64,000 nucleotides of DNA from Monocercomonoides exilis PA203 (GCA_001643675.2 LSRY02000003.1:1736001-1800000); one strand, 5' to 3'; positions 2,339 through 63,054 are shown, numbered from the stretch's first letter. The notes: a model not told the origin generated them from the letters alone. Translations and numbers: made by a program.

Positions 2339-4840
2339 CATCATCAAAGCTATCCGTGCTACTCGACACTGAGTCATCATCCCCGACAATCAGTGCCCGC
2401 ATCGTCTGCGCCTTCTCCAGCAGCGCCGACACGAGTGACTGCTTCTGCGGCGGGAGCTGTTTTTCTGCGATTTTCCGCTCCGAAGCAGGGCGCAGCTTCA
2501 CTCCGCGCTTGATTAACATCAGCGTCGCCAGCTGCGGGCTTAAGAGGCGGGCGGAAGAGAGAGGGTCTTTGGAGGAGGAAGAGAGGGAAGGATCGACTTT
2601 CTTCAGCTGCACACCTGCTTTGATCGATTCGGTGAGGCTGAGGCTGAAAAGAATAAAGAAATGAAGTGGATTAATTGAAGGCGGGGAGAAAAAATATAAA
2701 AGGAAATATATTGAGAATAGAAAATATTCAGAAAAACGAAAAGAAACAAAAAAAAAAAATATGAACAGATTTAGATGACAAATCAAGATTGAAAAAAAAA
2801 AAAATAAAACAAAATAAAATAAAAACAAACCCGATTCCAACAGCTCTCTGTACAGTCTTTGGTTTTGGTGCGACATTTGGAGCTTGAGGAACAGAAGATA
2901 AAGGAGGCGGAGGAGGGACAGTATTCAGCGGGGGAGGAGGAGGGATAGAAGAGAGAGGAGGCGCAGGAGGAATTGAAGGAAGCGGCGGGGCAGGCGGAAT
3001 GGACTGATTTGAGGCGGATGATTGAGAAAGAGGTGAAATGGAATCTGAAGAAGAAGAAGAAGAAGAAGAAGAGGAGGAGGAGGAGGAAGAAGAGGAGGAA
3101 GAAGGTGAAGAAGAAGAAGAAGAAGATGTTGATGACGTTTGTGGAAGTGGAGGTGATGATGTGAGTGAAGGTGGAAGAGGAGGTGCAACAGGAATTGAGG
3201 GAAATGGACTGACAGAAGGTGAATTTGAAGAAACATTTGAAGAAATCGCAGCGTTATGTGAGTTATTCGAATCTTCTGTGATTAAAAGCTGGTTATTCTG
3301 AGAAGAGGATTCAGAAGAAGAAGAAGAAGAAGGAACTTCCGAAACAGGAATAGCTGATAATTCTGCAGAGAGAGAAGAATTCAAAGGCTCTGGTTGTTGT
3401 TGCTGTTGTTGCCGCTGCTGTATATGAGCATCATTTCCAATAGAATTTGCTTCAGATGATTGACCTTCTCCACAAATGTCCTGTTGTTTGATATCATCAG
3501 CCTGCGAAACTTGAGAAGAAAGAGAGGATTCTGTCGTTTTCTGATCAGATTTTTGATCTGTTTCACGTTCTGTGCCTTTTTCAGAAGAGTCTGAAATTGG
3601 AGGAGAAGAAGATGAAACACTTTCATTAGTCCCGTTATCAGCTAACGAAGAATTGTTTGAAAGATCTCCATTTGTATCAGACGAGACAGGTATATTGCTT
3701 ATGCTGGAAATTTCGTTCTGTGTTGAATTTTGTTCAGAGTTGAGTGTTTGAATGGTTTGAAGCGAAGCATTTGGCATTTCTGGCTGTTGCGAATCCTCAG
3801 AGCGATTAACCGATGAACCGCGTGAAGGAGATTGCGTTGTATTGACTGACTGTGCAACTTGAAGTGGATTGCCTTGAAATGCGACATTCTGCTCAGATGA
3901 CACGTTGTTTGTGTTTTCTCTTCCGTTTGAATTGGATGAAATTGATGATTGATCTTTTTTGGTATTCTCGGATATGCTTATTGATGAAAGAGGCGGCTGC
4001 TTTTTAATAAGCGTTGGATCGAACGTGCGAATAGGCGAAGAAGGAATAGGTGCAGGAGAAGTTTGCGTGGCTTTCTTCTCTTTTGTTTTCGCAAGAACAC
4101 GGGGCTTTCTTTTATCCTTAGCTCGTTCCTTTTCTTGCTCTTCAACACCAGTTTGAAAGGATTCAAGCCAATGTGTCATGAAGTATCCAGGATTTGAGTA
4201 CTTTTCTGATAGATGAGGTAATGATTCCGGACGTTGATTTGAAGGAATTTCATCAAGAATTCGATCAATAACATGAAAATTTGGAGCAGGCTCAGCTGCT
4301 TCGTATAATGCCTGAATGCTTGGAGAGCGAGATTCAACTGTAAAAATATCGTCTGTGGACGATCCTACAAGAGAAAAAGGATTACCTATTAAATTACATT
4401 ATTGTGAAAATTGATTTTTGAGAAAACATCTAAAAGAAGCAAACATTCTTTAAAAGCAATTTCATCAAAGCCTATTCGATAAAAGACTTGTTGTATTGAT
4501 GGGATTTTTGCCTTTATTGCTTGAGTTCGTTCTGCAAGGTTTGTTATTGATTCAGAAAGATTTTTAACTTTTTCATCTATTGTACTCGAAAGATGATTCT
4601 AAAGTTTATCATTTGTCATAAATTAATTTAAAATGCAAATGCGATGAAATGTTATTAAACACAAACAAAAATTCCAGCAATCTGTTGAATAGCAAGCAAA
4701 ACATTACAATAATCAGTAATTTCAATAGCTTCTCCAATAGTTGAATCAATTTCCTGATCCTTCAACACAGTAGATTCAACTTTTTGAGAACCTGATAACG
4801 ATGGTCCAGAGGCCACCAGAAGATGAGATAATTGAGTCAT
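2334..4840 (-). CDS. SCAR: SCAR/WAVE-family actin nucleation-promoting factor; complement(join(2334..2643,2831..4385,4445..4598,4667..4840))
   Basis: Three GTTTG...AG introns give one frame. The WAVE homology domain motif 'IFTVESRSPSIQALYEAAEPAPNF...KYSNPGYFMTHW' is followed by a basic stretch, a Ser-rich linker, poly-Pro, WH2 motifs ('LTESIKAGVQLKKV', 'LIKRGVKLRP'), a central helix and an acidic tail. Confidence 0.85.
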
Positions 4841-5074
4841 GGATCAAAAATTAATACGAGTTATAGGAGGTATTTTCAATAAAAAATAATAAAATAAAAA
4901 TAAAAAAAATAGTTCAAAATATCACAAAAATATCATAAACAACTCAAAAATGAAAATCTCGTATATTTTATAAAGAACTCTTAATAACTATTTAAACACG
5001 CTAAATTTATAATTGGAGGTAACAATAGCAAATTAAGAATTATCAATACACTCGAAAAAAATAAAAATACAAAA

Positions 5075-8921: not shown

Positions 8922-9508
8922 TGCGTATTATCTTCAAAATTCGTTAAAAGAATTTTTGATAAAAACATTGTTTTGCATTATATCCACCAAAAAGGGGAAA
9001 AAAGAAAAAAAACATCATATGAGACATCAACAACAAGAAAACAAATGTTTTCAGTTATAGGAATGGAAAACAAATAAAAGACTTACGTTTTCAGCAAACA
9101 ACGGTCAGTTCACAAAAGGGCTTGTCAAAAAAATCTTTGGATGCAAAAAAGAGTGAAAAATACATAAATAATGGTACTTCATATTTTTATTGGTGTTATC
9201 CTCTGACTGGTCATTTTTTAATTGAGATATCTATTTTTAACAAAGTGCAATGAAGTTATTTCAAAACATAAAACATTCAGAAACAAAAAGAAAAGAAAAT
9301 TTTTTTCTACACTCTTTTTTAATATATTTGAATTATAATAATTTACAGATTATAATTGTTAAAACAGAATTCCTTTTCTAACTTATCGTTTCAACAACCG
9401 TCATAAAAATGAACAAAGCTAGAAAAATCTAAAGACATTTCATTCAAACTGAGACCTGATTACAGTTAAAAAATTACTTTTGTTTTTGTAAAATCAAATT
9501 TCAGGTTC

Positions 9509-10718
9509 ACTTCAACCAACACCAATTCAATCCCCTCCTTCTCTCTTCACTCATCTCTCTCCATCCACTCATCCATCTTCAAACACACCCACAACCCCAT
9601 CGATGGTGCCATCCTCCCTTCCCTCAACAGCCCATCCACATCCATCTCTGCCTTCAACACCTCTTTCCTTCGCCAAACACGCTCTTCATCAAATGATCCT
9701 GTGAAATATATTGGATCTGAATCTCAACAAGAGAAATTAAAAAGATTGTCCTTTATTGAATTGAACAGCTATCTCTTTGAGTGGTGCGAATGGAATAATT
9801 CAAATGGAGGAAATGATTATGGAGGTGCTCTAAAAGTCAACTGCACGAATGCCAATCTCACAATCACTTCTTGTTCATTCAATAATTGTTCAACAAATGG
9901 ATCCAATGGTGGAGCGTTATACAGTTACTGTTTGCAAAATGAGAATATTGCAAAATCCAACTTTTCAAACTGTTCTGCTCCTCATGGAGGAGCAATTTGC
10001 ATTGATGGTCGGCAATCATCTTCCGTATATTCATTTTCTGATAACAGAGTGGAAAATTGTTCAATAACAGGAACCATTGGAACAGGATGGTATTTCTATA
10101 TTGAAAATTTTTCTTCAAACGGTCAATTCTTGTTCACCAAATGCAAGTGCTTCTCAAATTCTGGTGGTGATTCAACAGGTTCTCTCACATTCAATTGGCC
10201 TCCACAAAATAAACCAAGCCAGTTTTCAATCGTTGAGTGTCAGTTCATCAATAACAAATTGACAAGTTCATCAACTTCATGGGGAGGTGCTGCAATGTTT
10301 TTCAGAGACACATATTCCTGGATGAATGGAAATAAATTCATCACATTCTGCTTCTTCGATGGCAATACAGCAATAAATGGAAGGGGAAACGATGTGTTCT
10401 TTTACGGAAGTGATATCACCCAATCTCCATTCCAGCAATGCGGCTCAACAACCCTATCGAAAAGGGTGTATAATAATGGAACAGCTGAAAACGCTGAATA
10501 CAACAGTTGGCTTCCAATCATCAACCAGAACAAAATAGTTTCAAATGGTGGAAGTGATGCTGATGCCTGTGGCAAAGCACAGCAAAGCCCATGCGCCACA
10601 GTGGAGTATGCTCTCGGATGCATTGCTCCCTTCAGTGATGCCTCCCTCTCCCTTCTCGTCTCCTCTTTCACTCCCACAAACACTCTCACATTCTGCGCGG
10701 TCGATACAAAATTCACTG
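9509..10718 (+). pseudogene. Cassette 1: partial copy of the receptor N-terminal beta-helix domain
   Basis: Open frame 9470-10750 with no upstream ATG or signal peptide. Aligns to ~54820-56030 (HTHNPIDGA...FEWCEW...GGAL...FCFFDGNTA...AVDT). Confidence 0.85.
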
Positions 10719-13700
10719 TATGCGATATTATTTATCTAATTCTCATATAAATTTCTTCTAATCCTGATGGCTTTTCATTTCACTTTGCATTCATGAATTT
10801 TCATCTTCTTTTCAACAAGAGAACATATCATCACTTTTCTTTTGAGAAGTCTAACATCGGATCGCATTAAACATATTTCTTCGATATTTCCTCTTCGAAT
10901 TTCTCCTTTTCATCAAATGCAAATTCCATTTGTTGCTTTTAGGAATCATCTGCTTCCCTTTCTTCAATCATATTCGAAGGTTTTTCAATTATTAAATTTT
11001 ACTCAATTTTCTTATTTCAATGTGTTTGTATCCGATTCGCTCAACTATCTCTTTGAAATTTCTCTTCAAATAACACTTTTCTTCAAAATTGATTTTCCTC
11101 TTTATTTCATTTTCAACTATTTGTTGTGGTTTCGCTGCTGTGAAATCTACCGAATGCCATTTTTGGAACCCAGCCATTCCAAACAAAAATAGCCTCATTG
11201 TCCTTTCCTTTTCACTTCAGATGCTTCAGCCTCCTAATGAAAAAGTCAGAATCATTTTCTTGCTGATTGCTTGTCTTCTCATAAGCTTTTCTCTGCAAAA
11301 AATAGAATCGTTTCCGTTGACATATTATTTCAGCTGATATTCATTATTTGAATAAGTATTTCTTTGTATCTTTCCAAATCGCAACGATAGATGAGGTCTG
11401 GCACTGAATTCGATGGGAGTTGAACGAACTGAAAAAAATAGTATCATTTTTAATTCGTTCATCGAAGAAGGCGTTGAAGAAGAAAAGAAGGATCACGATT
11501 GTTGAAAGGAAGATAGATGCTGTGTGAATGTGCGAACGTATGAGGAAGAACGAGGTCAAAGAAGAAGAAGAAGAAATTGAAGTTAAAGAAGAAGAAGCAA
11601 ATTTTGAGCGAATAAGATTTTGTGTGTTTTTGGCCATGCGATTCATAACAGGCGTGCTTGTCGCTGAATAAACAGGTGAAGTGTGAGAAGGCGAATCTTG
11701 TGTTTGTAAATCAAGAAATGAGGAAGATGGTTGATTGAATGAAGGAGGATTATCAGAAGACGACGATGATGAAAAAGAAGGAAATGATGTGGAAGAAGAA
11801 GATGCAGTTGAGAAATGCGAAAACAGTCGAACAATATTTATGAAGAAGATAATGAGAACGCTTTGCGTGATGTTGTTGGTTGGACAAAACGTCTCGCTTG
11901 ATGCATTAACTTCACATTGGTTAGAAAAACTCAATCACAATATTTGTGACGAACAGATTGTGGAAATCAATCTTGCTGTATATTTCCAAAGGCAATTGAA
12001 TTTCATTTTGCGATTTCCTCTCCTTTCTCTTCAAAAATAGAAAATGTTGATTTTTCTCGATTTCCATTCCCTTCTTCCATTCAACCCCCAAAATCATCAG
12101 AAAATATCAATCCCCTCCTTTTCTTCACCTTTCCCTGTCTCTTCCAAAAAAACATTCTTCTCCTCTCATAAAAGTTACCCCCTTTTCATATGAACATTTC
12201 TCAATTTCCCTCTTCTTTCCAGCTTTTGCCCTCTTTTCCTTTTTTTCAAATTCCATTTCTCCAATCACCAATCAGTCCTCTTTCATCATCTCCAACCACT
12301 TCTCTACATATTTACTATATTATCTTCTCCAAATCTCCACCCACTCTTCCCCACCCCTTTGTCTCAGAATTTCTTTCATTCAAAAACACCTATTGAAATA
12401 TTAACATTCAAAAATATACTCAACTCTCACCCCCTGCTACAAATAATATTCTTCCATCTCTTCTCTGCCCCATATCCCTCATGTGCCTGGTGTTGATGAG
12501 ATAGACATCAAATATTTCTTTTGGTGATTGAGAATATTATTAAAGGAGATGATCATGCCAAAAACAGAAAAACACATCTGGACATCAATCGCACTGCGGG
12601 TTGGTTGAGAAGACCCCCCAGTGAGATACACGATGCATTTTGTGGAGATGCATTCCATGCCGCAACTTGACCATTCTGAGACTGAAATGAAGAGATTGAA
12701 TTTTTGGAATGATGATAGCTGTGGAAATGAGTGTATTTGACAAAATACAATCGATGCGCAGTTTGACATTTATTTATTTTTCTATATATGAATATTTATC
12801 TGTTGAATGTTTTTGTGTTGTTTTCAGGGCAGGAGGTGGAAATGAATGAAAATGAACGAAAGCGGGATATCTCATTGTGCAGGGTGGCTATGGAGTTGGG
12901 AGAGCGAATTCATATGGAAAGTTCCCAGGATGAAGGGATTGGGGAGGGAATTGGAGATGATATTTTCAGACGCAAAAACAGGACATTTTTCAATGATGAG
13001 AATGGAATTTGAGCACGATGCATAAATCTCACATTTTTCAGAAGGGAGGGAAATCGATGCATTTGATGGAGAAACAACTGATGGAAAGGATTATTTGCGA
13101 ATCAGATGATGAAACATTCGAAAAAGGAAGGAATAATGAAATTTTATTGAGGGGAAACAGGTGCCAATAGGATAACATAGAGTAATTGACTGAAAAATGT
13201 TTAGAAGGTTTGATATTGATATTTATTTTGAAGTGATTATTATTTTGTTTTAAGAATGCTGAAAGAATGAAGGATTAGATGGCTTTGAAGAAGAAAAGTG
13301 GGAAAGAAAAATAAAGAGAGAGATGAAATTCGATATTTCGAAGATGGCTTGCATTGTGCTTTGACAAATAATTATTTTTGAGGAAAGACGATTTTTTGTG
13401 AAATAAGGGGAAGTGAAAAAGGAAGAGATGGAATGAAAAAGAGATTGACGCGTGCTTTGTATTTTTTGTTGGAGAGAGAGAAAGAGATTGAGCTGAAAAT
13501 GAAAAAGGATTCAGAGGCTATTGTTTGCAAGAAGAAAAAGGAACATAAGAAGAGAATTTCAATGAATTTCTCCGTTGGTATTAATTGACACTCATCATCT
13601 CAATTTTCAACAATTAATCGTCTCATTCAATCCATTCATCATCATCATCTTCTTCTTCTTCTTCAGACACATCAACAACATTTCACACAGCATCTCCTTC

Positions 13701-14174
13701 TTTATCGTCATTCACTTCATCTGATTGGATTTCTTCGAATTCTGCGTTGAAATCAGAGAATAAGAGAGAAATGAAAAGGAAACAAGGAAATGTATTGATG
13801 AAGGAAAAAATAAGAAATAAAAATAAGAAAAAGAAAGAGAAAGAAATTCTTGAACTAGGGTTCATGCTTGATGGAAATGAGATTGAGAGGGTTGAAGAGA
13901 TTTTTGGATTAAAGAGAGAAGATGTTTCGAAGAGGAGATTCGAGTTGAATGTTGAATTTGGGAAGGAAAGTATTTGGATAAACGGAGGGTAATTTTGAGA
14001 AGCGATATAACAAACAAGGGTGAATGACAAGATTCAGGAAAAAAAACTATCAAATTTGAGAGAAAAGAAAGAATGCAAGGAGAGGAGAAAATAGAGAAAG
14101 GAAAAATAAGAGACGAAAGTTAGAAAGACATTTCATTGGAAGAATATGAAAAGAAAAAGCAAGAACCTGCCAAC

Positions 14175-15098
14175 ATACTCGGCGTTTTCAACTGTTCCTG
14201 CATTCCACACTCTTTCAGCTGGGGTTGTTGAGCCACAATTTTCAAACGGAGATTGAGTGATGGCATTACCATTGAAGAACACGTCGTTTCCTCTTCCATT
14301 TTTGGCAGTGTTTCCATCGAAGAAGCAGAATGTGATGAATCTAATTTCATTCATCCATGTGAAAGTTGCATCCAAATAGATGGCAGCACCTCCATAATAC
14401 GATGAACTTGTCAATTTGTTGTTTATGAATTGACACTCATTAACTAAAAATTGATTTGGCTTATTGGTTGGAGGATCATTGAATGTTAGAGAGCCAGCAG
14501 AATCACCACCAGAATTTGCGATACACCAACATTTGGAAAACAGGAATTGGCAAGTCGAAGTCATATTATTGAGCCAGAAATACCAACCAGTTCCACACCA
14601 ATCTGTTATTGAACAACTTTCCACTCTGTTTTCTGAGAATGTCCAAACAGAACTGGATTGCGGCCAGCCAATATAAGCAGCTCCTCCATGGGCAGCTGAG
14701 CAACTTGTGAAATTGGATTTTGCAATGTTGATATTCAGTAAATATACACAATATAATGCTCCACCGTATCCGTTACTTGAGCATTTGTTGAATGAACAGG
14801 AAGTGATTGTGAGATTGGCATTTGCACAATAAACATAAAGTGCACCGCCAGATGAAGATCCACCAGTTGAATCATTCCATTCGCACCACTCAAAGCGATA
14901 GCTATTCAAAGCAGTGAAGGACAATCTGCTTAATTTCTCTCTGTGAGTTTCATTTCCAATGTGTTCAACAGGAGCATTTGATGAAGAGCGTGTTTGGTGG
15001 AGGAAAGATGTGTTGAAGGCAGAAAGAGAAGTGGATGGGCTGTTGAGGTTGGGGAGGATGGCACCATCAATGGTGTTGTGAGTGTGGAGGAAGGTGGT
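14175..15098 (-). pseudogene. Cassette 2: partial copy of the receptor N-terminal domain
   Basis: Open frame 15098-14133, immediately preceded by TAA. Homology runs from TTFLHTHNTIDGA to GTVENAEY. Confidence 0.85.
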
Positions 15099-15840
15099 TT
15101 AATAGAAGTATTTCACTTGCAAGAAAAACACACAAAAATGAAAGAAGAAAACCAGAAAAAATGATTTCTCCGAAACTCTCTGTTTTTATTTGTTATCATT
15201 TGCCTTCACAATTTTCAACAATTAATTATCTCAATTGATTCACTTTTTCTTCTCCTTCTCCTTCTCCTTCTCCTTCAAACATATCAACAACATGTCACAC
15301 AATTTCTTCTTTGACTTCATCATTCACTTCCCAATTTTTAATTCTTCATCAATTGCTTCAGCTGCAGAGATGATAAGAGAAACGAAGAAGAAACGAAAAA
15401 ATTTTGCAGTTGAAGGAAAAACTTACAAATAAAATTTAGAGGAAGAAGAATGAGAGAAGAGGCGAAAAAGAAAGCAAATGAAGAGTCTATTTTGAAAGAG
15501 GATTCAGAAAGAAAATGGAATTGAAGGATTATGCAAATTTTTTGAATGAAAAGACGAAGATGGAAGGAGAGAAGATTCTGGTTGGAAGTTGAATTTGCGA
15601 AGAGAAGGAAACATCAACTTACAAAAAGAAATGTATTTGGATAGACAGAGGATAAATTTGAATAAAGAAATAACAAATAGGGGTAAATGACGAAATTCAG
15701 AAGAAATCAAAATATTTGAATAAACGACTAAAAGAAGGAATGAGAGAAGGGGAGATGATAGATAATGAAAAAAGAGATGGAAGCAGGAAAAGCATTTCAT
15801 TGGAGAATTTGGAACGAAAAGCTAGAATCGGTCATTTTTT

Positions 15841-16885
15841 CTCAGCGTTTTCAGCTTGTCCATTATTAAACACTCTTTCAGCTGGGGTTGTTGAGCCACA
15901 ATTTTCAAACGGAGATTGAGTGATGGAACTGCCACTGAAGAACACATCGTTTCCTCTGCCATTTGTGGCAGTGTTTCCATCGAAGAAACAGAATGTAATG
16001 AATTTAAACCCGCTCATCCAGGAATAAGCATTCCTAAAAAACATTGCAGCACCTCCCCATGAAGTTGATGAACTTGTCAATTTGTTGTTTATGAATTGGC
16101 AATCATTAACTAAAAATTGATTTGGTTTGTTTTGTGGAGGTGAATGAAATGTGAGAGAACCAGCAGAATCTCCACCAGAATTTGAGATGCACTTGCATTT
16201 GGAAAACAGGAATTGAGCACTTGTTGGTGTACTTCCCATGTTAAAATACCAACCAGTTCCACACCAATTTGTTATTGAACAATTTTCCACTCTATTTTCC
16301 GAGAATGTCCAAACAGAATTTGTTTGTGGATTGTATAAGTGTGCTGCACCTCCATGTGCAGCTGTGCAGCTTGTGAAATTAGATTTGGTGACATTTATAT
16401 TCAACAAATTTCCGCAGCACAACGCTCCAGCATGATCACCGGTTGAACAGTTATTGAATGAACAAGAAGTGATTGTGAGATTTGCGTTTGTGCAAACAAC
16501 ATAAAGTGCACCTCCATAGTTATTTCCACCAGTTGAATTATTCCATTCGCACCATTCGAAGAGATAGCTGTTCAATTCAGTAAAGGACAATCTACCAGGT
16601 TTCAATTTTTGAGTTTCGGATCCGTTATATTTTACAGGTTCATTTGGAGAAGATCGAGTTTGGTGGAGAAAAGAAGCATTGAAGGCAGAGAGAGAAGTGG
16701 ATGGGCAGTTGAGGGAAGGGAGAATTGCACCATCGATGGGGTTGTGGGTGTGTTTGAAGATGGATGAGTGGATGGAGAGAGATGAGTGAAGAGAGAAGGA
16801 GGGGATTGAATTGGTGTTGGTGTTGGGGGAAGTGGAAGTGGAAGAAGAGAAAGAGGTGGTTGAGATGAAAGGATTGAGTGAGTGG
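15841..16885 (-). pseudogene. Cassette 3: partial copy of the receptor N-terminal domain
   Basis: Stop-free frame from LNPFISTTS to GQAENAE. Contains a 138-nt block with only 2 mismatches to 55366-55503. Confidence 0.85.
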
Positions 16886-17571
16886 AGGGGAAGGAATTGA
16901 AGGATTTGATGAGGTTTGGAGAAGAGAAGAAAAGAAGAAAAAGAAATTGAAGAGAAGAACTGTTACATTAAAAAATCCAAAAAGAAAGGTGAATTTTGAA
17001 ATTGCTTAAAAGTTCAAAAATATCCAATCATTCTATCAAATATTATTGATTCTAAAACATATCAGTATCTGTATTTTCATCTATGAAATAACAAAAAAAT
17101 TGGAGAAAAATTTTTATCAATCAAACTCAATATTTTTTTTTTTTTTTTTTTTTGTGTATTCAAAACTTTTTAAAAAAAAAGTTATTTCTCTCTTTTTTTT
17201 CGAAATATACACCAAAAAAAAATACAAAGTCGAAAAACTTTCAAGTTAAGTCGAAAGCTCAAATTTTTCAAAATTTAAACAAGTTGACAAAAATCAATAA
17301 AAATCATAAAACATTTTTTTTATTTAAATATCAATGATACTGTTATTTCGACAATTTTTCATCTCTTTTCCTGCATATTTTTGTGCTTCCTTTTGTCCAA
17401 TTGCATATTAAAAAAACATGAGAGGAATTTTTACATATTTTTGTCTCATTTCAATTGAAAGCACACTTCTTCGCAGAAAATTCATTAAAGAAAATTTTTG
17501 ATTTTTTAACTTATTTAATGAAGGATTATGAATTCAACATTGGCTCTTTTTTTTGTGTGTTTTTTAATTTA

Positions 17572-47500: not shown

Positions 47501-47950
47501 GAACTTCGAAAGCATGAATGTTTCACATTATGATCGCTTTTCTTATCAGATTTCACAGACATGTTTCTGAAGGCACAGTTTGAAATCTCTTCACTTTGGC
47601 TCTTTCCTGATAACAGGAAATAGTCTAAAGATGAGACAGTCAGATCTACAACGATGGAATTTCTCAAAATAACAGAATTTGAATCATCAGATGAAAATAT
47701 GAGGCTGGAAGGGCAAAGATTCTTTTGGGGGATCAAAGTCAAATTCACAGTGTTGATTGACCCACTTTGCAAAAGAAAAGGAGATGCTGATTTTTTGTGA
47801 AAAATGAAGGAATCCATCATTAGAGTTTATGCATCTGTAATCAGCACACACGTTGAAGAAGAATGTTAAATTGCAGAATTGTTTTGAGAGACCTGTTTGA
47901 AGTTGAAATGGAAGAATATGAAGGATAAAATGAAGAAGAAGAAGAAGAAG
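41525..47950 (-). pseudogene. Frameshifted paralogue of the beta-helix/TM receptor, truncated after the TM segment
   Basis: Consecutive ORFs with GG(A/G)-CxF and CGxxxxPC repeats, 'ICKWNGSLV', a TM segment and 'KDPKAFEMVTME' (cf. KDQKSFEMVTMD). No kinase-like part. Confidence 0.85.
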
Positions 47951-50900: not shown

Positions 50901-51752
50901 TTGACTTCGTGCATTAATGTGACAATTGAAAATAGTTCATTTTTTGGCACTTTAAACGATAAAAATTACGATATACAGAATGTAAATGCAAAAGTCAACA
51001 AAAACAACGAAATCGGATGGCAAATAGATGGCATCTGCAAATGGAACAGCTCTTCAGTCAACTTTATAGAAAGTACAGTTTATGTGAACGAAACTTCATT
51101 TGAGAACTTCTCTCAAGGAGCCATTTCTCTGTCTAACTCGACTGTTACGATAGAAATGGGGATGTTTCAGAACAACAATCCATTTGTTTCCGGCTATCCT
51201 TCTCTTCGACGCAACATTTTGTGTTCAGATGGAAGCACGTTGAATGTGAAGAGTGTGAAAGGAGGAGATGGAATGAAGGATAACGCCTCATTTTGGATGT
51301 TGAGCGAAGGTTGCGCTCTCAAAGGAATTCTTTCTGAAGTGTCAACTCCTTTATTTATCTCCATTATTGAAGAAGTGAAGACAACGAAAGAGGAAAATGT
51401 GATGAAAATAATATGTTTGGGACATCTTTTGATGCGTTGCAATCTGTCGATGCAAATAATATTCAAAAGAGGAGATGAAAAAGAAGTTTTGAAGGAGTTT
51501 AGCAAAGAGGATTATATTAATGAAAATGAAATTTGTTACGATATTGACTTGACATTATATGAATGGGACGAAGAAGATGCAGAAATGTATGAGTTTGTTT
51601 TATTTGGAGATGAAACAGCGTCTTCAACAGAGAATTTTATTATGAAGAACAAAAGAAGTCCTCAAACAAAAGGAGATGAAGAAATAGATAAAAGAGTTAA
51701 AGGAGAAAAGAGCGTGCTGAAAGGAGAAACAGAAAAAGAAGATCAAAGATAA
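47990..51752 (+). pseudogene. Decayed internal fragment of another receptor paralogue
   Basis: Broken ORFs with CGSETEPC, CGQREDPC, ICKWNSSSV and YPSLRRNILCS matching the 54-63 kb protein. Confidence 0.8.
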
Positions 51753-53701: not shown

Positions 53702-53971
53702 TTAAAAAATTAACCTTCCAGTGTGACTCTTGTATGGGATTGGTTGGTTGCAAGGGGTGTAATTCCAGCAATTCTGTACTTGAGTGCACAAGAATTTTTA
53801 AGGGAAAAATTTGATTGATATGGAGAGTATAATAACGTAATAAAAAATAAAATATTAAGAAATAAATAAAAATGATAATATAAAATGGAAATTGATATGG
53901 GAATAGTGATTAGAACCATTAATGATAATGGTTATTTGCGAGGAGATATGAAATTTCACTGCAGTTTGAAA

Positions 53972-56900
53972 ATGATTAGGATCACAGTATTAGCTCAAAT
54001 ACTCGCTGCATTCCTCACCATAAATCTCGTTCATGGAGAGAACATCGCAAACAGCATCATCAGAGGCGCTCACACAGACAAGGTGGAACATGCATCGGGA
54101 AATCACATCTGTGGTGCTCAGACAAGCTTCGCCCTCATCAACACCTCCTTGTGTGTGACCCATCTCAACATCATCCCCCTCGCTGGTTGCCCACTCCTCA
54201 CTGCCCAACACCACTCAACTGCCTCCATCTCCTCCTCCACTTGCACCATCCACCCACTTTCCCTCACCAACAACAACTACTACCAACAATGCCCCCTCTT
54301 CCTCTCTGCCCATGCCTCCCTCGCCCTCACAAACTTCTCCCTCACCACCCACCAACCTGCCATCTTCTCCTTCCCCCTCTTCTCCACCCCAAACAATCTC
54401 CTCCCACATGCCCACTCCCCAATCCCTGCCTCCTTCTCCATCTCCCACTCCTCTTTCTCCTCCTTCATCTCCCTCATCCAGCCTTTCCTTTTTTTCTCCT
54501 TCTTCCCTCTCTTCCCCATCCCCTTCTCCATCTCCATCCCTTTCCCCTTCTCCTTCATCTTCCTCATCCTCATCCTCATCCTCTTCTTTTTTCTTCTCCT
54601 TCCCCTTCCCTTTCCCCTTCCATTTCCTCTTCCCCTTCCCCTCTCCATATCCATCACCAATCCCATCCCCACCTCCAAATCCACCTCAATCTCCATCTCT
54701 CAAACACCCTCTTCTCCAACATCTCATCTCCCCAATCCCCTCTATCACTTCCATCCCTTCCCTCCCACACTCACTCAATCCATTCACCTCAACCACCTCT
54801 TCCTCTTCTTCCACTTCCACCAACACCAACACCAATTCAATCCCCTCCTTCTCCCTTCACTCATCCTCTCCATCCACTCAACCATCTTCAAACACACCCA
54901 CAACCCCATCGATGGTGCCATTCTCCCCAACCTCAACAGCCCTCCACTTCTCTCTCTGCCTTCAACACTTCTTTTCTTCACCAAACACGATCTTCACCAA
55001 ATGCTGCTGTTGTACATGTTGGAACTGAATCTCAAAGAGCGAAACCTGGAAGACTGGATTCTTTTGATCTGAACAGCCACAAATTTGAATGGTGCGAATG
55101 GAAAGATACAACTGGTGGAGCTGTCCATGGAGGAGCGCTTTATGTTTATTGTGCAAATGCAAACCTCACAGTCACTTCTTGTTCGTTCAACAATTGTTCG
55201 GCAAAAGGACACAATGGTGGAGCATTAGATTGCAATAGTTTGTTAAAAATTGATATCACAAAATCCAATTTCACAAGTTGCTCGGCTGCTCATGGAGGAG
55301 CAGTCCATGCTACAAGTCCACGATCAAATTCTGTTTGGACATTCTCAGAAAACAGAGTGGAAAGTTGTTCAATAACAAATTGGTGTGGAACTGGTTGGTA
55401 TTTTAACATGGGAAGTACACCAACAAGCGCTCAATTCCTGTTTTCCAAATGCAAGTGCATCTCAAATTCTGGTGGTGATTCTGCTGGTTCTCTCACATTT
55501 CATTGGCCTCCACAAAATAAACCAAATCAATTTTTGGTTAATGATTGCCAATTCATAAATAATAAATTGACAAGTGCATCATCTTCACGCGGAGGAGCTG
55601 CGCTGTGTTGCACAAACACCTTCACTTGGATGAGTGGAGTAAAATTCATCACATTCTGTTTCTTCGATGGAAACACTGCCACAAATGGAAGAGGAAATGA
55701 CGTGTTCTTCAGTGGTAATGCCATCACCCAATCCCCATTTGAGAATTGTGGCTCAACAACTCCAACAAAAAGAGTGTTTAATAATGGAACAGCAGACAAT
55801 GAAACTTTCAATGGCTGGCTCCCCCTCATCGCCCAGAACAAAATCGTTGCCAGCAATGGAACTGATGCTGATGCCTGTGGCAGACCCCAACAGACCCCAT
55901 GCGCCACCATCGAGTATGCTCTCACTGGCTTCGTTTCCCTCCTCCACGACGCCTCCCTCACCCTCCTCAGTTCAACATTTGTTCCAACTCAAACACTCAC
56001 CTTCAGCGCGGTTGATACCATAATCACTGGAAATGGCACAACTGCCACCATCATCGCCTCCAGTGGCATTCCCCAACCACAAAACTCACATTCACACTCA
56101 TCACAATCAACATCATCATTTTCTTCATTTTCATCGTCATATTCATCATATTCATCTGCATCTTCTTCACCAGATCCATCTGCCTCGTCTGCCCTCTTCC
56201 AACAGACACAGGGCTCCCTCACAGTCTCTGCCCTTGCCATCGCCCACAACTCCTCAAATCAAATCACTCCCATCCTCTTCCACCTCTCCGGTAACTCCCC
56301 TTCCCTCAATCTCAACACAACCACCATCACCGGAACAACCTCCATAACAATAAAAACTCCCCTCTTCTTCCTCACTGCTGGCTCCCTCGCCCTCAACCAC
56401 ACAGCAATCACCAGTCTCACCCTCAGCAGCCAAAGCATCTTCCACCTCACCTCCCTCACAAATCCCCTCACCCTCAACTCCTCCAACATCACCCACATCA
56501 CCTCCACTGCCGCCCCCACCAGCTGTGTCCTCTCCTCTGCCACCTCCCCTGCCCTCTCCCTCTCCCTCGCCAACTGCACCATCACCAACATCAACTCAGC
56601 TCCGCAAAACCAACAGACTGCCACCAATGGCGGGTGCATCTCATTCGCCTCATCTTCCACTGCCAACTCCTTTTCAGTGAGTGACACAGCCTTCTCCACC
56701 TGCTCTGTGAGCGAGGATACAAGTTCTGGAGGAAGAGGCGGCGCTCTCATGATCGAGTACAACGATGATTCAGAAGTGTCATCCACAACCTTTTCCATCA
56801 CCAATATCGTGTTTTCAGCCAACAAGGCCAGCGTCGGAAGAGATGTGTATTTTGTGTGTGAATCCCTTGTCGCTTCTGTGAAAGAGCCCTTGTTCGCCTT

Positions 56901-59900
56901 CATGGGAAACATCACTCAGAAAGACAACTCGGCTGTTGGACATGACAGAACAGAAGCATTTTGCGATTGGGATGTCGATTTGTTCATATTCTTCGATGGA
57001 TTCTTTGATGATATAATTTATGTTGATGGAACATCTGGAATGGATAAGGAATATTGTGGGATAGAGAAGGCGCCATGTTACAACGTAAACTACGGAATCG
57101 GGCATTTGAAAAATACACAGAATACAAAAAAGGAGATTATTGTTATTTCGAATTCATTGATGGCGGGATGTGTGGATGTGGGGGGATTGTGTGTGAAAGC
57201 AAAAGAGGAGGAAATGATAAGAATCGAATGCCAAAGAGAAGTGAGTGGATCTGAAGAATGCATTCTTAAATCATCATCACTCACTGAAATGAAGTTCATT
57301 GGGATTATTATTCCATCGAGTTTTAGCAGAACAATCACATCGGTGATTGAATCAAACACTCAAAATGGCAAGTTGCACATGAATAACTGTGAGATGAGTG
57401 TGGCAGGAGGGAATGGAAGCACAATTACATTTTTCTTAATCAAATCGACAGGAATGATGGTTAAGCTGGAGTTTGTCACGATTTCAGATGTGAAATCAAC
57501 AGTCCCGTTATTTTCGTTTACTCTTTCATCATCAAATATGAACGATCAGGAATACAAGGTGAAACTTTTAAATTGTTCACTGCAAAGATTGGAGATTGAT
57601 AGCACAACAGCAGTTGATGAAAAGGCATCAGTGTTTGGAGAGAGTGTTGGAGTTGGTATGGTGATAAATGGAAGTACAATTGATGGGGCATTATCAGAGA
57701 AGAGCAAAGAAGGAGGAGCATTGAAGATAGCGTTGAACGCAGGAGGGTTTATGAATATTCAAGAGAGCTCATTTGTTGGATGTGTTTGTGAGAATGAAAA
57801 CGATGGAGGAAAAGGAGGAGGGATATATCTGGATTGCAGTTCAAATGAAGTCGGATTTCAACTTTCATCGATATCATTTTCTGGATGCTCAGCAACAGTT
57901 GGGAAGAACATGTTTGCGAAGAGTGGGAATCTGGTGAACAGTGTGAAGACAGAGCGTTTTGCATTTGATTACTCAGGATATTCTAATGATGGAAATGCAT
58001 TTGTTGGAGAAGATGGGATTTATGGAGAAATGGATCTTCGAGTATTTCTTGTTTCTTTGAAGTGGATAGAGGTGTCTGTGTCGACTGGTGGGCATGACAC
58101 GTTGGGATGCGGAATTGAAAAATTCCCATGCAAAACGATGAAAAGTGGAATTGACCATATTGACAGAAGTGGGACAGAAGGAAAGAGGAAAGTAACTGTG
58201 AAAGATGGAGGTACAATCGAAGATATTTATTCTTTCACAGATGAACTTGTGATTGATGGGTGTGTGAATAATGGAGATATCGATAAACGCATTCCTATTC
58301 ATTTTGAAGAGACAATCAAAGGGAATTCTGCATCAACTTCATCTGTTATTTCATCAACTCAGCCACTTAGCTTGTTATCTTTGAAGCTGCAGATTCCAAA
58401 TCAATTTGTACCAAGCAAGAATTCTTTGATCTTATCGAGTAGGATTCTCCAACTCGAAAACTGTTTATTTGAAATTCATTCAGCAGCAAATACTGTTCAA
58501 TATACATTGATATCCACAACCACTGGAAGTTGCACATTGAAGGGATGCAGTTTGGCAGATTGTTCGTTTATCATATCTCCATTGGTGATGGCTTCTTCTG
58601 TTTTGTTTGAAAACAACAGCTTTTCAAGTATTGCAAACACTGGAAGCGGCGAAGGAGGTGTTGCAAGAGTGATTTTGAAAGAGAATGAAGAATTTGTTAT
58701 CAAATCAACAAATGTATCATCTTGTTCGCTTTCATCAAGCAATGGAAAAGGAGGATTCTTGTATCTGAATTGCGAAAATTGTTTGAATGAAACACCATTC
58801 CTTTTGGAAGGTGTAACATTTGAGAACAACAATGCAACCATAGGAAAGAATATGTTCATTTTGGGAAAGGATTTCAACATTTCTGTCACAAACGATACTT
58901 TCAAATTTAATTACTTATCAATGAAAGATGATGACAATTTATTTGTTGGAAGCGACGATTTTCATCAAAAAAAGGATTTATTCATGTTTCTGATTCCATA
59001 CAGCTCATTTGAGATATTTATCTCATTCGAAGGATTTGATGTGGCGCGTTGTGGAAGTGAGGAAGAACCGTGCAAAACGATGTGGAAAGGGATGAAAAAT
59101 ATGGAAACAGGAGATGATACGAAAACAATTCAAATATCAGGATCAACAATTATTCAAGATTCATTCAGCATGTCCAATTATCAGATCAAAAAGGCTTCAT
59201 CAATGGGAGAAGAGAATGTGAAAGCAATATTGAATTTTGAAAAGGCAATTGGAAGTCAGCTGGAATATTTCATGGTGAATGAAATTCATCTTGAATTATC
59301 AAACATTCAACTTCAACTAAAATTAGGATTTGACAATTCGGCCAAAACCATTATTTCGAATATAAATGGAGATTTGGTGATAACTGGATGCTCATTCCAT
59401 TCAGAAGCAGGAATAAACAATGGATTTGATTGTGTGTTTGTGGATGCGATTGGAGGAAGTGTAGAAGTGAATGATTTGTCGATTGAATCATCCAATGTTG
59501 GAAATAGCATTTTTGCAATAAACAATGCTGGAGTTTCTTGCCATTTTGTGAATGTTCGAGTGAAATTGTTGAATGAAAGCGGAGGATGCCTTCTTCTGAT
59601 CAAAGGATCTGAATCAACAACAAAGATTAATGAAGGAGGTGAAGAAGGAACAAATATTGAGATTGAGAAATCATCATTTTCAGGAATAAAGAGAAGTGAC
59701 AATGGGCCAAGTATTTTGGAGTCGAAGAGTGAGAAAAAGATTTGTTTGGTTGTAAAGGAGAGCAACATCACAGAAGATAAGGCAGAAAATAGTGAAAAAG
59801 GAGGGGCGATATTCTTCACATTGGGATCGTCTGGATCAATGAATATGATTGACTCCAAAATCACAAATTGCAATTGCAGTATTAGTTCGGGGAAAGGAGG

Positions 59901-62900
59901 AGGGGTGTATCTAGTAACAAAGGAAAGAGGAGATTTGAATTTTTCATTTGTGGGAATGAAATTCAGTGACAACGGTGCAAGTGTTGGAAAAGATATTTTC
60001 ATTGAATGTTATAACATCACATCTCAGATCAATGAAACCCAATTTCGGTTTGATCTTCGAGAAAATCATTATTCACGAATAAATGCGATATATGGAATTG
60101 ATGAATGCCAGTATACAGTTAACACAGATCTTATTAGATTTGTGACGATTCATCAGAGTGACACAATTGTTGTGAGTGGTACGAATGGTTCTAATGATAG
60201 ACAATGTGGAACAAACGATCTTCCTTGTGATTCAATTAATCATGGACTAATGCATCTGACTTCGGAATATGTGAGTCTGTTGTATGTTGACACCAACAGT
60301 GTGATTGGTGAAGAGATAAATTTGGAAGAAATGAGTTTGAGTTCAAAGAGCAGAGAAATGTGTGAAGTTGAAGTGGAAACAGATATTAGAGAAACAAGAG
60401 GGGCATTGATGGCAACAACTGGAACAGTTTCATTGTTGAGAGTGAACTTTGTGTTTGATCCAAATTTCATCTCTTCGCATGAATCATTAATATCACCGGA
60501 GGGAGGGATTCTTGAAATCATGAATTGTTCTTTTTCGTCAAAACTATCGAATGAAGATGGAAATATTGTGAATGCAAATATTCCATTTAACATTATTAAA
60601 ATGGATAAAGGAGAATTACAACTTGATGGATGTGCAATATCAAATCTCATTCTTCATGAATCTGCATTGTATCTTTCATCTCCACTTCCATCAGTTATTT
60701 ATTTGTTTGAGGTATCAAATATAACGGTTGAAACATCTTTGATAGATATTAATGAATGCGGACAATTAACAATTAAGGATTTCAATACAGAAAATATAAC
60801 AGCTGAAGGAAATGAAGAATCACTGATATCTTGCTTGTCAATGAAAAAGACAATGCAATTAGCAAATTGCACAATAGGTGAAGTCAGTTCAAAGACCAAA
60901 AAAGGGAAATTGATGAAATTGGAGAATTGTTTGGATGTGAAAATGGATAGTTGCATTTTTGATGGAAGTTTAAAGGAAAGAAATGAGAAGCAGTTGAATA
61001 TTGAAGAAGAGATGTGCAGATGGGATGGATCTCTTGTGGATGTTGTGAAGAGTTCCATGGTGATGAAAGTTTCAACAATCACAAATTCACCAGAAGGTGG
61101 AATAACAATGAGAGGAGGAAATGTGATTATTGAGAAAGGAGAATTCATTGACAACAATCCATCGATTGAAACGTATCCTTCATTGAGAAGGAATGTTATT
61201 TGTTCAGATTCAGGAACATTGAATGTGATGAGTTTGAAAGGAGGAGATGGAGTTTTGCCAAACACATCACTTTGGATGTTGAATGAGGGATGCGGTTTTG
61301 AAGGGATTGTCTCTGAGAGGGATTCATCGTTCTTCATTCCAGTTCTGGAGAGTGTAGAAACAAAAGAAGAGGCAAGTCGAATGAAATTGACATTCAAAGG
61401 GATGCTTCTTGTTCCATGCAATCTGTCATTCTCACTTGTGAAGAGGAAAGGTGAAGAGAAAGAAATCGAAAAATATGATTTTGATTCAAATGGGTTTTTA
61501 TCAGAGAAAGAAGCTGAAGGAAGCGTTGCGAAAGATCTAATCAGCGGATGTGGAAATGAAATAGAAGTGAGTGTGCATATTTTATTCGGAGTTAATGATT
61601 ATCCTTCATCAACAAATCCATTTATTCTGAAGAATTCTAGCGTAACTCCACCAAAAGATGATGATAAAAAAACTGAAGGAGGAAATAAGAATAACAATGG
61701 AAACATTTCAACTTGGCCAATTATCGTTATTATCATCTTTGCTTTGTTATTCTTGATCGTTTTAATCGTGTCCATCATTGTAACCCTCAGATGGAGAAAA
61801 TCAAAGAGAAGAACTGAAGAATTGGAAGAGATAGTCAATGATACTGTGAAAAAAGATCAAAAATCTTTTGAAATGGTAACTATGGATATGTCTCCAGATG
61901 ATCAATGGAAAAGTTCTGGTAGAGATTCAGACAGATTCAACAAAACAAAACAAAAAATGAGAATATCTCCGAAAAAAATGGAACATTCTGAATCTTCGGA
62001 ATATCTTTTAGCTGAAAGTGGATCAACTGAATATATTCTGGGTCATGATTCTGACAAAATACCAAATTGGGCTTTAGAGAAAGTGGAAGAAGATGAGGAT
62101 GATGAAGAACAAGAAATCAAAAAAAGATCTCCTTCTCCTTCAAAATCTTCAATTTCTTCTTCTGACACAGACTCATCCTTTGTACGCATGGAGGATATGT
62201 GTCCAACTACTTCATCAATGTCAAATCTGGTAGATGCAATGGCTTGCTCTTCTCCTCATGAAAAGTTAATTGTTGACTTGAGAGATTCGTTGTTCATGCT
62301 GCTTCACGGAAGAAATGAGAAAAAGGAGATGGCAATTGGAACATTACAGGAGAGAGAAATCACTGGATCTCAAGTATTGTTCTGGGTTGCAAATGGTGCA
62401 CTTCATTCATTTGAAGAACATGAAATGCCTCTTCCTTCCTTACCAAATTTGAGTCCACACATTGTTCTTTTCTCAGAGCACATGGTTATTTGCATTGCAC
62501 TCCATTCAGACTGTTCATCGGACTCAGACACTTCATCCGTTTCCTCATCTACTATCGCAACATCTTCTTCTGAATGCTCAACTGCTAATGAAGTTAAAAA
62601 ATCTTCACAACCTCCTTCATCAGCTTTTGAGGATGAAGATGATGATTTGAAAGAATGCCTCAGATGGAAAGCACCTGAGCTGATGATCAACAAGAAAATG
62701 GGAGCAACAAAGAAATCTGTAGTGTTTTCTATTGGAATGATGCTGTGGGAATTTTTGAGTTTACAAATTCCATTTAGTGAATATGAGTCTGAGACAGCAG
62801 GACAAAAATTGGTTAATGGAGAAAGACCAGACCTTAACAAAATCGCTGAATCCTCTTTATGCGAATTGTGTGGATGTTGTTTAAGTAGTGTTCCATCTGC

Positions 62901-63054
62901 ACGACCTGCAATCGTAACTGTGAAACGTGAACTTATTAAAAAGTTCCCACCTGGTGCTGCTATCATCACAGCTTCAGATGCCACAATGTATGAATACCTA
63001 AGTGAAGAAGAAGAAGATAAAGCGAGTTACGCTTTGGAAGAAAGTTTAGTGTGA
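53972..63054 (+). CDS. ~3000-aa type I membrane receptor: signal peptide, Cys-rich beta-helix (Pmp/pectin-lyase-like) ectodomain, TM, TKL-derived pseudokinase; apparent frameshifts at 54490-54945
   Basis: Signal-like MIRITVLAQILAAFLTINLVHG. GGA(L/I)...FxxN and CGxxxxPC repeats. TM at ~61714-61790. LRWKAPE...KSVVFSIGMMLWE...IPF...GERP...RP. The frame is open from ~54945 to the TGA. Confidence 0.85.

What the first reader, a model, noticed from the sequence alone, without database searches (positions are those of the whole stretch)
9509..16885. Candidate cassette-based diversification system: three silent, stop-free variable-domain cassettes for a beta-helix receptor pseudokinase
Seen: three fragments copy the same ~300-400-codon N-terminal domain of the 54-63 kb receptor. 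All begin in the same conserved C-rich anchor (...HTHN(P/T)IDGAILP(S/N)LN.PSTS.SAFN.SFL.QTRSS) and lack a start codon, signal peptide and TM segment. None contains a stop or frameshift, while neighbouring paralogues and transposases are riddled with them. Inference: they are donor templates copied into an expressed receptor. Established analogues are trypanosome VSG mosaics, Borrelia vls cassettes, Neisseria pilS and lamprey VLR cassettes. I know of no such system described for metamonad receptors.
Basis: partly seen in the sequence, partly recalled or inferred. Interest (0 to 1): 0.88.

Follow-up and report, generated by a model that had tools for sequence, protein, structure and literature searches.

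The report
Readable receptor-tip gene fragments swapping patches
The gut protist Monocercomonoides exilis keeps three cut-down but still readable copies of the outer domain of a giant receptor-like gene here. They trade short DNA patches with other family members, including the nearby near-complete gene, so they look like a slow evolutionary store of receptor variants, with no evidence of a programmed switching system.

Summary
Three stop-free fragments (9470-10747 +, 14136-15098 -, 15835-16962 -) copy the beta-helix head domain of the receptor-like gene at 53970-63051 of Monocercomonoides exilis. None has a start codon, signal peptide or membrane segment.

- **Anchor:** it is ordinary coding sequence. 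In five intact paralogues one exon runs from signal peptide through a C-rich linker and the anchor into the head domain.
- **Shared boundaries:** they come from duplication of already truncated units. f2 and f3 are tandem copies, and a second cluster of four fragments lies elsewhere on contig LSRY02000003.1.
- **Open frames are not neutral:** flanks of older duplicates carry 11-12 indels and K about 0.41, while the coding parts carry 0-2 in-frame gaps. dN/dS is 0.19-0.31, and about 5 stops per fragment would be expected by chance.
- **Mosaic copies:** the receptor and f3 share a 235-nt tract at 96% identity, against 74-79% beside it. Its direction is unresolved.
- **No single expression site:** at least 45 full-length paralogues exist, and the local receptor is frame-broken in its linker as assembled.
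- **RNA data:** inconclusive.

The best reading is a gene-conversion network with truncated members, an evolutionary reservoir; programmed cassette switching is unsupported. The scan found the same kind of array in six other windows of this genome. It is not described in the two genome papers I read.

The parts
9470..10747 (+). Fragment f1: open frame of 426 codons with linker remnant, anchor and the whole head domain ('long' 3' class). Homology to the receptor runs 9515-10718.
   Evidence: The AlphaFold2 model of 9581-10717 shows beta-helix coils at residues 56-320, mean pLDDT 72.5.
10718..11481 (+). Non-coding 3' flank of the f1 unit, shared with units LA and LC of locus L001. K is about 0.38-0.41, with many indels.
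11766..14175 (-). Non-coding 3' flank of the f2 unit. It is 87% identical to the flank of unit LB in L001 (95-98% over the first 300 nt). It has no similarity to receptor gene bodies and holds a C/T-rich linker-like relic at 12010-12420 (+).
14136..15098 (-). Fragment f2: open frame of 321 codons with anchor and head domain ('short' 3' class). A stop lies just upstream of the anchor.
15099..15200 (-). T-rich 5' junction flank of f2, shared with L001 units LB and LC. There is no ATG in f2.
15206..15841 (-). Non-coding 3' flank of f3, homologous to the f2 flank 13598-14175 (tandem duplication, K 0.41, 11 gap events).
15835..16962 (-). Fragment f3: open frame of 376 codons with linker remnant, anchor and head domain ('short' 3' class). 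Homology to the receptor runs 15848-16902.
16088..16322 (-). f3 side of the tract shared with the receptor (226 of 235 nt identical).
53970..54159 (+). Start codon, signal peptide (MIRITVLAQILAAFLTINLVHG) and leader of the receptor. This is the frame of ORF 53879-55069, not the frame of the main ORF.
   Evidence: Homologous leaders occur in P0166 and L003-L006.
54160..54939 (+). C-rich linker (51% C, 2.6% G) plus anchor. There are five frame changes relative to intact paralogues (54489 +1, 54592 +7, 54764 +2, 54865 -1, 54943 -1), and the net result is out of frame.
54940..56030 (+). Head (beta-helix) domain of the receptor, the part copied in the fragments.
55325..55559 (+). Receptor side of the tract shared with f3: 96.2% identity, against 74.1% before and 78.8% after (Fisher p 7e-14).
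56031..63051 (+). Rest of the receptor frame: repeated ectodomain modules, a membrane segment at about 61714-61788, and a kinase-like C-lobe at about 62635-62934.

Best explanation
The three pieces are truncated paralogous copies of the outermost beta-helix ('head') domain of the giant receptor-kinase-like family of Monocercomonoides exilis. They have no promoter context and no start codon.

Shown:
- Truncated units (head domain plus unrelated flank) were multiplied by tandem and segmental duplication. This explains the shared boundaries.
- The head-domain parts are mosaics that share short tracts, about 40-235 nt, with other fragments and with full-length genes.
- Their reading frames are kept open although their flanks decay.

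Inferred:
- Homology-dependent ectopic gene conversion runs among all copies of the head domain, complete or not.
- Tracts copied in from selected full-length genes overwrite damage faster than it builds up.
- Fragments that would pass stops to working genes are weakly selected against.
- The fragments therefore act as a standing, evolutionary-time store of head-domain variants that now and then donate patches to complete receptors. They are not a programmed, single-expression-site cassette switch.
For: - **Duplicated truncated units.** f2 and f3 are tandem copies that include about 600 bp of flank. L001 on LSRY02000003.1 holds four more fragments with the same junctions and flanks.
- **Recombination inside the domain.** All four combinations of 5' junction type (C-rich or T-rich) and 3' class (short or long) occur.
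- **Non-neutral frames.**
  - Flank K is 0.41 with 11-12 gap events, against coding K 0.17-0.26 with 0-2 in-frame gaps.
  - dN/dS is 0.19-0.31, including 0.28 for f2-f3, which diverged after truncation.
  - The neutral simulation gives P(intact) below 0.001.
  - All seven fragments are stop-free in the domain.
- **Conversion.**
  - The permutation test for runs of identity gives 8 of 78 pairs at p about 3e-4, five of them fragment against full-length.
  - The receptor-f3 tract is 226/235 identical, against 283/382 and 197/250 beside it.
  - For f2-LB the coding part (K 0.27) is more diverged than its flank (K 0.15, locally 95-98% identity).
  - Head-domain distances are star-like at 68-83% and do not track flank distances.
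- **Anchor and linker are coding.** This holds in five intact single-exon paralogues.
Against: - Direction of transfer is not shown for any tract.
- Only 13 of probably hundreds of copies were sampled, so nearest donors are mostly unknown.
- The run test assumes exchangeable polymorphic sites, so tracts in conserved stretches (for example columns 496-575) may be overcalled.
- Private substitutions in fragments look more constrained (19 S: 20 N) than in complete genes (22 S: 61 N). Passive refreshing does not obviously predict this. It could mean direct selection on the fragments.
- Expression of the fragments could not be excluded. RNA contigs were short, mostly 95-99% matches from paralogues, with a few exact pieces.
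Confidence: 0.6

Rival explanations
1. A dedicated cassette archive. The fragments are maintained by selection as donors, and segmental conversion into expressed receptors occurs at high frequency or in a regulated way, like VSG mosaics or vls, pilS and msp2 cassettes.
For: - The copies are start-less but strictly open.
- They are clustered in arrays with inverted arrangement.
- Tracts are shared with the near-complete receptor and with the intact gene MONOS_9677.
- Fragment-private changes have a low N:S ratio.
Against: - There is no single expression locus. At least 45 full-length paralogues, where checked each with its own signal peptide, lie on many contigs.
- The adjacent receptor is frame-broken in its linker as assembled.
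- Boundaries are inherited junctions, not designed repeats. The 3' ends of other annotated fragments are scattered.
- Most tracts are old (84-93% identity).
- No somatic data exist.
Confidence: 0.2
2. Sink only. The fragments are dead by-products that merely receive conversion tracts from working genes and never contribute back. Their open frames are a passive side effect.
For: - For f2-LB the coding part is more diverged than its flank, so tracts were copied in.
- No start codons are present.
Against: - Conversion needs only homology, so one-way flow would need a special cause.
- The receptor is closest to fragments (f3 96%, LD 85%) in the shared tract, while the best sampled full-length gene is 73%.
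- Fragment-to-fragment tracts are common. Without selection these would spread damage, yet none of seven copies has a stop.
Confidence: 0.1
3. They are real short genes or exons that encode secreted head-domain-only proteins.
For: - dN/dS is 0.19-0.31.
- Related units elsewhere have an in-frame ATG plus a hydrophobic leader. These are LC in L001 and the annotated MONOS_11907.
- MONOS_18537 is annotated on unit LA.
Against: - None of the three window fragments has an in-frame ATG or signal peptide, and f2 has a stop at the leader.
- The upstream flanks differ between units, and the annotated N-terminus of MONOS_18537 is interrupted by stops in its paralogue LD.
- Downstream flanks carry indels like non-coding DNA.
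- No GT-AG joints appear in the RNA contigs.
Confidence: 0.07
4. Neutral pseudogene debris that is simply young.
For: Truncated copies are common in large, fast-evolving families. The M. exilis papers note that unclassified repeats overlap the tyrosine-kinase genes (PMC8767320).
Against: Units that share a truncation have flanks diverged to K 0.41 with 11-12 indels, yet their coding parts have no stop or frameshift.
Confidence: 0.03

Closest known systems
Trypanosoma brucei VSG archive and mosaic VSG formation (from general knowledge; not tested here)
   Same: A large genomic store of incomplete gene copies. Short segmental conversion builds mosaics, and the copies lie in arrays.
   Different: VSG uses telomeric expression sites with one active gene, and most archive copies carry stops or frameshifts. 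Here every sampled fragment is open, no expression site is evident, and the family is a receptor-kinase-like one in a commensal. No switching has been observed.
Bacterial silent cassettes: Borrelia vlsE/vls, Neisseria pilE/pilS, Anaplasma msp2 (from general knowledge)
   Same: Promoter-less, start-less, open cassettes that cover the variable domain and begin in conserved sequence.
   Different: Those systems have one expression locus, one-way transfer and measured high switching rates. Here there are at least 45 complete genes, direction is unknown, and the boundaries are inherited truncation junctions.
Birth-and-death multigene families with ectopic conversion and truncated members, such as plant receptor-like kinase and NLR clusters and Babesia ves1 fragments (from general knowledge)
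   Same: Tandem and segmental duplication, truncated paralogues, patchwork exchange concentrated in the ligand-facing domain, and evolution over generations with no somatic component.
   Different: Truncated members of such families usually decay. Here seven of seven sampled fragments keep the frame although their flanks have decayed.
Expanded tyrosine-kinase-like family of M. exilis (Karnkowska et al. 2019, PMC6759080; Treitli et al. 2021, PMC8767320)
   Same: This is the same gene family. It is reported as the largest in the genome (332 predicted kinases) and as overlapping unclassified repeats.
   Different: In term searches of these two papers I found no mention of start-less head-domain fragments, of their open frames or of patch exchange.

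Membership tests
Silent-cassette segmental gene-conversion systems (vls, pilS, msp2, VSG type) | Donor copies lack promoter, start codon and export signal but keep the variable domain open | tested here: met
   No in-frame ATG or signal peptide upstream. Frames are open, beyond the neutral expectation. Promoter absence was not tested.
Silent-cassette segmental gene-conversion systems (vls, pilS, msp2, VSG type) | One or a few dedicated expression sites that receive the cassettes | tested here: not met
   At least 45 full-length paralogues lie on many contigs. Five that were checked have their own signal peptide in frame. The local receptor is frame-broken in its linker. Expression itself was not measured.
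Silent-cassette segmental gene-conversion systems (vls, pilS, msp2, VSG type) | Tracts of donor sequence found in the complete gene | tested here: met
   The receptor-f3 tract is 226/235 identical, against 74-79% beside it. LB and LA share tracts with MONOS_9677. Direction is unknown.
Silent-cassette segmental gene-conversion systems (vls, pilS, msp2, VSG type) | One-way, frequent transfer within clonal lineages | not testable with these tools
   Needs time-course long-read data. Only one assembly and four small RNA contig sets were at hand.
Silent-cassette segmental gene-conversion systems (vls, pilS, msp2, VSG type) | Uniform cassette boundaries set by conserved repeats | tested here: inconclusive
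   There are three 5' limits within 130 nt and two 3' classes, each inherited by unit duplication. The 3' ends of annotated short models are scattered over residues 511-1052, with a cluster at 683-702.
Right-handed beta-helix ectodomain | Stacked three-strand coils | tested here: met
   The AlphaFold2 model has repeated strand triplets at residues 56-320, with pLDDT mostly above 80 there. All weak Foldseek matches are beta-helix or solenoid proteins, but none reaches E 0.001. Pfam Beta_helix hits a neighbouring family gene in L001.
Protein kinase (active) | Complete catalytic domain with N-lobe and catalytic loop | tested here: not met
   Pfam PK_Tyr_Ser-Thr and Pkinase match only profile positions 160-258, the C-lobe, in the receptor and in two paralogues. 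This fits 'pseudokinase' but rests on profile coverage only.
Neutral pseudogene fragments | Stops, frameshifts and dN/dS near 1 at the rate of the flanking DNA | tested here: not met
Ordinary spliced exons | GT-AG introns on both sides and partner exons | tested here: not met
   Intact paralogues are single-exon across signal peptide, linker and head domain. No GT-AG joint appears in the RNA contigs. Flanks are not conserved as coding.

The most novel reading that the evidence does not exclude
The fragment arrays are a selected germline archive. M. exilis keeps hundreds of open, start-less head-domain copies because segmental conversion from them diversifies the ligand-binding tips of its giant receptor-like proteins. 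That would be a receptor-family counterpart of the VSG and vls archives, in a harmless gut commensal.
Probability: 0.2. Interest if true: 0.8.

Novelty: new variant of a known kind. Interest (0 to 1): 0.55.

Why it matters
Archives of partial genes that feed variation into working genes are known mainly from pathogens that evade immunity. Here the same raw material is present: open fragments without starts, arranged in arrays, with patch exchange that includes complete genes. It sits in the largest gene family of a commensal oxymonad, on receptor-like proteins instead of coat antigens.

If the fragments do donate, this is a route to fast evolution of sensing or adhesion surfaces. It would be testable with existing cultures and long reads.

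There is also a practical point for annotation. Models of this family are often 5'-truncated or are built on fragments, so family counts and domain inventories for M. exilis need care.

Tried and rejected
- **Anchor as the 3' end of an intron (polypyrimidine tract plus CAG).** Rejected. MONOS_9677 is one 7977-nt exon, and four more paralogues read through in one frame. The anchor is conserved at the protein level in distant members.
- **Fragments carried by a transposon (Pack or Helitron type).** I found no terminal inverted repeats other than the fragments themselves and no Pfam domain in flank ORFs.
- **Flanks as a decayed remainder of the gene.** No colinear blastn or tblastx similarity to six gene bodies.
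- **C-rich linker as a frame-switching (phase-variable) tract.** Not supported. Five of five other full-length genes are in frame, and only the window's receptor is shifted.
- **Structured RNA in the region.** No Rfam match.
- **RNA evidence.** Only four small runs, held as contigs, were offered. Pieces are 78-180 nt and mostly 95-99% alike, which suggests paralogues. No conclusion on silence was possible. Only 9400-15400 could be laid, so f3 was not covered.
- **Direction of the receptor-f3 tract.** Neither partner has a stable close relative outside the tract, and LD also matches the receptor there.
- **Foldseek against PDB.** Only weak beta-helix matches.
Full report
**Identity and observation.** Earlier notes of this scan and the protein hits place the window in Monocercomonoides exilis. 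Stop-to-stop frames of 426, 321 and 376 codons lie at 9470-10747 (+), 14136-15098 (-) and 15835-16962 (-). I call them f1, f2 and f3. They match residues about 298-683, 300-612 and 298-607 of the 3024-codon frame at 53980-63051, at 73-84% nucleotide identity. None has an in-frame ATG, signal peptide or membrane segment within 500 nt upstream, and f2 has a stop just before the anchor.

**What the anchor is.** I first suspected an intron end, but it is coding sequence.
- MONOS_9677 (P0166) is a single 7977-nt exon. It runs from a signal peptide through a leader, a Ser/Pro-rich linker encoded by the C-rich tract and the anchor into the head domain.
- Four more full-length genes (L003-L006) read through the same path without a stop. 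Their annotated models start at internal methionines about 1-1.5 kb too far downstream.
- The anchor motif AIDG.I...N...SL..FN.SF is kept in members only 37-40% identical.
- RNA contigs that overlap 9515 continue upstream into linker-like sequence, so expressed paralogues carry linker and anchor on one transcript.

**The local receptor.** Its start codon and signal peptide (53970, MIRITVLAQILAAFLTINLVHG) are in the frame of ORF 53879-55069, not in the main frame. Relative to intact paralogues the linker changes frame five times (54489 +1, 54592 +7, 54764 +2, 54865 -1, 54943 -1), and the net result is out of frame. The tract is 51% C and 2.6% G. Such sequence contains almost no stop codons in any frame, which hides the shifts. 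As assembled, the 'expressed receptor' cannot join its signal peptide to its head domain. The assembly is Nanopore-based with Illumina polishing, and residual frameshift errors are acknowledged (PMC8767320), so this needs read-level checking. Its kinase match covers only the C-lobe, which fits 'pseudokinase'.

**Family context.**
- At least 45 models of 1810-2659 residues carry the head domain, and at least 20 short models are fragments. All are from M. exilis and lie on many contigs.
- The kinase family is published as the largest in the genome (332 members, PMC6759080). It is noted to overlap unclassified repeats (PMC8767320). Term searches of those two papers turned up no description of start-less fragments.
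- The head domain models as a beta-helix: strand triplets at residues 56-320, mean pLDDT 72.5, with the anchor disordered. Foldseek gives only weak matches, all of them beta-helix or solenoid proteins.

**Why the boundaries are shared.**
- f2 and f3 are tandem duplicates that include about 600 bp of unrelated 3' flank (13598-15097 against 15206-16763).
- Locus L001 (LSRY02000003.1:1963900-1985339) holds four more fragments, LA to LD, in a mirror arrangement with the same junctions and flanks:
  - f1 with 0.76 kb of flank matches LA and LC;
  - f2 with 2.4 kb of flank matches LB;
  - f3 matches LD.
- f2, LB and LC share a T-rich 5' junction.
- The boundaries are therefore inherited from duplicated truncated units, not cut independently.
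- All four combinations of 5' type and 3' class occur: f3/LD, f1/LA, f2/LB and LC. This requires recombination inside the domain.
- The 3' ends of other annotated fragments scatter over receptor residues 511-1052, with a cluster at 683-702.
- The flanks show no residual similarity to receptor gene bodies, no inverted terminal repeats and no Pfam domains.

**Are the open frames more than chance?** Yes.
- Pairs that share a truncation have flanks at K 0.41 with 11-12 gap events. Their coding parts are at K 0.17-0.26 with 0-2 gaps, all in frame.
- With the flank rates, a simulation expects about 5 stops per fragment plus several frameshifts, and P(intact) is below 0.001. All seven fragments are open across the domain.
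- Pairwise dN/dS is 0.19-0.31. This includes 0.28 for f2-f3, which diverged after their shared truncation.

**Exchange.**
- Sliding windows show that each copy changes its nearest relative every 50-250 nt.
- A permutation test on runs of identity at polymorphic sites gives 8 of 78 pairs at p about 3e-4 (Bonferroni limit 6.4e-4). Five of these are fragment against full-length, among them LB with the intact gene MONOS_9677.
- The clearest case is receptor 55325-55559 against f3 16322-16088. It is 226/235 identical, against 283/382 before and 197/250 after (Fisher p 7e-14). Six of the eight differing codons are synonymous.
- For f2-LB the coding part (K 0.27) is more diverged than the flank (K 0.15, locally 95-98% identity). 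Patches were therefore copied into at least one of these fragments after the unit was duplicated.
- Head-domain identities are star-like at 68-83% and do not follow flank distances. This is what a shared pool mixed by conversion would give.
- Caveat: the run test treats polymorphic sites as exchangeable, so tracts in conserved stretches (columns 496-575) may be overcalled. The receptor-f3 tract stands out against all other pairs there (next best 80-82% in columns 405-495).

**Direction and function.**
- I could not polarise any tract. In the shared tract the receptor is closest to fragments (f3 96%, LD 85%), and the best sampled full-length gene is 73%. Sampling is 13 of probably hundreds of copies.
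- Private substitutions are 19 synonymous to 20 non-synonymous in fragments, against 22 to 61 in complete genes (Fisher p 0.023). Fragments are therefore not less constrained than working genes. Unsampled donors or direct selection could both explain this.
- RNA data were four small runs held as contigs. Pieces were short and mostly 95-99% alike, with a few exact pieces and no GT-AG joints. Only 9400-15400 could be laid, so f3 was not covered. Silence is neither shown nor refuted.

**Verdict.** The fragments are truncated members of a gene-conversion network of head domains. They are multiplied in arrays and kept open by exchange with, and possibly selection through, complete genes. They are a plausible evolutionary reservoir. 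The defining features of a cassette switch are either not met or untestable here: a dedicated expression site, one-way transfer and somatic frequency.

**Earlier scan findings.** The scan found the same kind of array in six other windows of this genome: s1-471064, s1-463737, s1-463787, s1-463842, s1-463746 and s1-471027. My tests agree with their common core. They disagree with the two notes that saw no link to full-length genes.

**Process notes.** One reference that ran through a stop (LC) was re-sent with coordinates that end before the stop.

Noticed in passing
window 53970-54943: The receptor's signal-peptide frame and its main frame differ. There are five frame changes across the C-rich linker relative to intact paralogues, hidden because C/T-rich sequence has no stops. 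This is either a 5'-degenerate gene or polishing errors in a low-complexity repeat.
   Followed up: partly
L003:3534-5001 (also L004-L006): Full-length family genes are annotated about 1-1.5 kb too short at the 5' end. The frame is continuous from a signal peptide at L003:3534, but the model starts at 5001. A probably spurious 179-residue antisense gene (3749-4341) sits on the G-rich complement of the linker.
   Followed up: partly
window 51760-53660: A 1.9-kb stretch upstream of the receptor has only 2.6% C on the + strand (A 42%, T 34%, G 21%). It is followed by the linker with 51% C and 2.6% G, an extreme strand asymmetry of unknown cause.
   Followed up: no
L001:18072-19290 (-), unit LC: This fragment has an in-frame ATG and a hydrophobic leader (MVFFFYFCVFF...) directly before the anchor, and a stop at the 3' junction. 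The annotated MONOS_11907 is similar. Some units may be short secreted-protein genes. f2 lacks the ATG, and in LB the ATG is out of frame.
   Followed up: partly
window 41558-47826 (-) and 48355-51704 (+): Two members of a more distant subfamily, about 24-47% identical to the receptor. The first has 3 in-frame stops in 1869 codons (two perhaps inside a 114-nt intron at 44485-44598) and a frame change near 42253.
   Followed up: partly
window 12010-12420 (+): A C/T-rich, linker-like relic (32% C, 4% G) lies inside the f2 flank in the opposite orientation to f2. It attracts high RNA-contig depth, probably from linkers of expressed paralogues.
   Followed up: no
codon alignment of 13 head domains (window, L001-L006): Private substitutions are 19 S : 20 N in fragments but 22 S : 61 N in intact genes (p 0.023). 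Fragments look more constrained than complete genes.
   Followed up: partly
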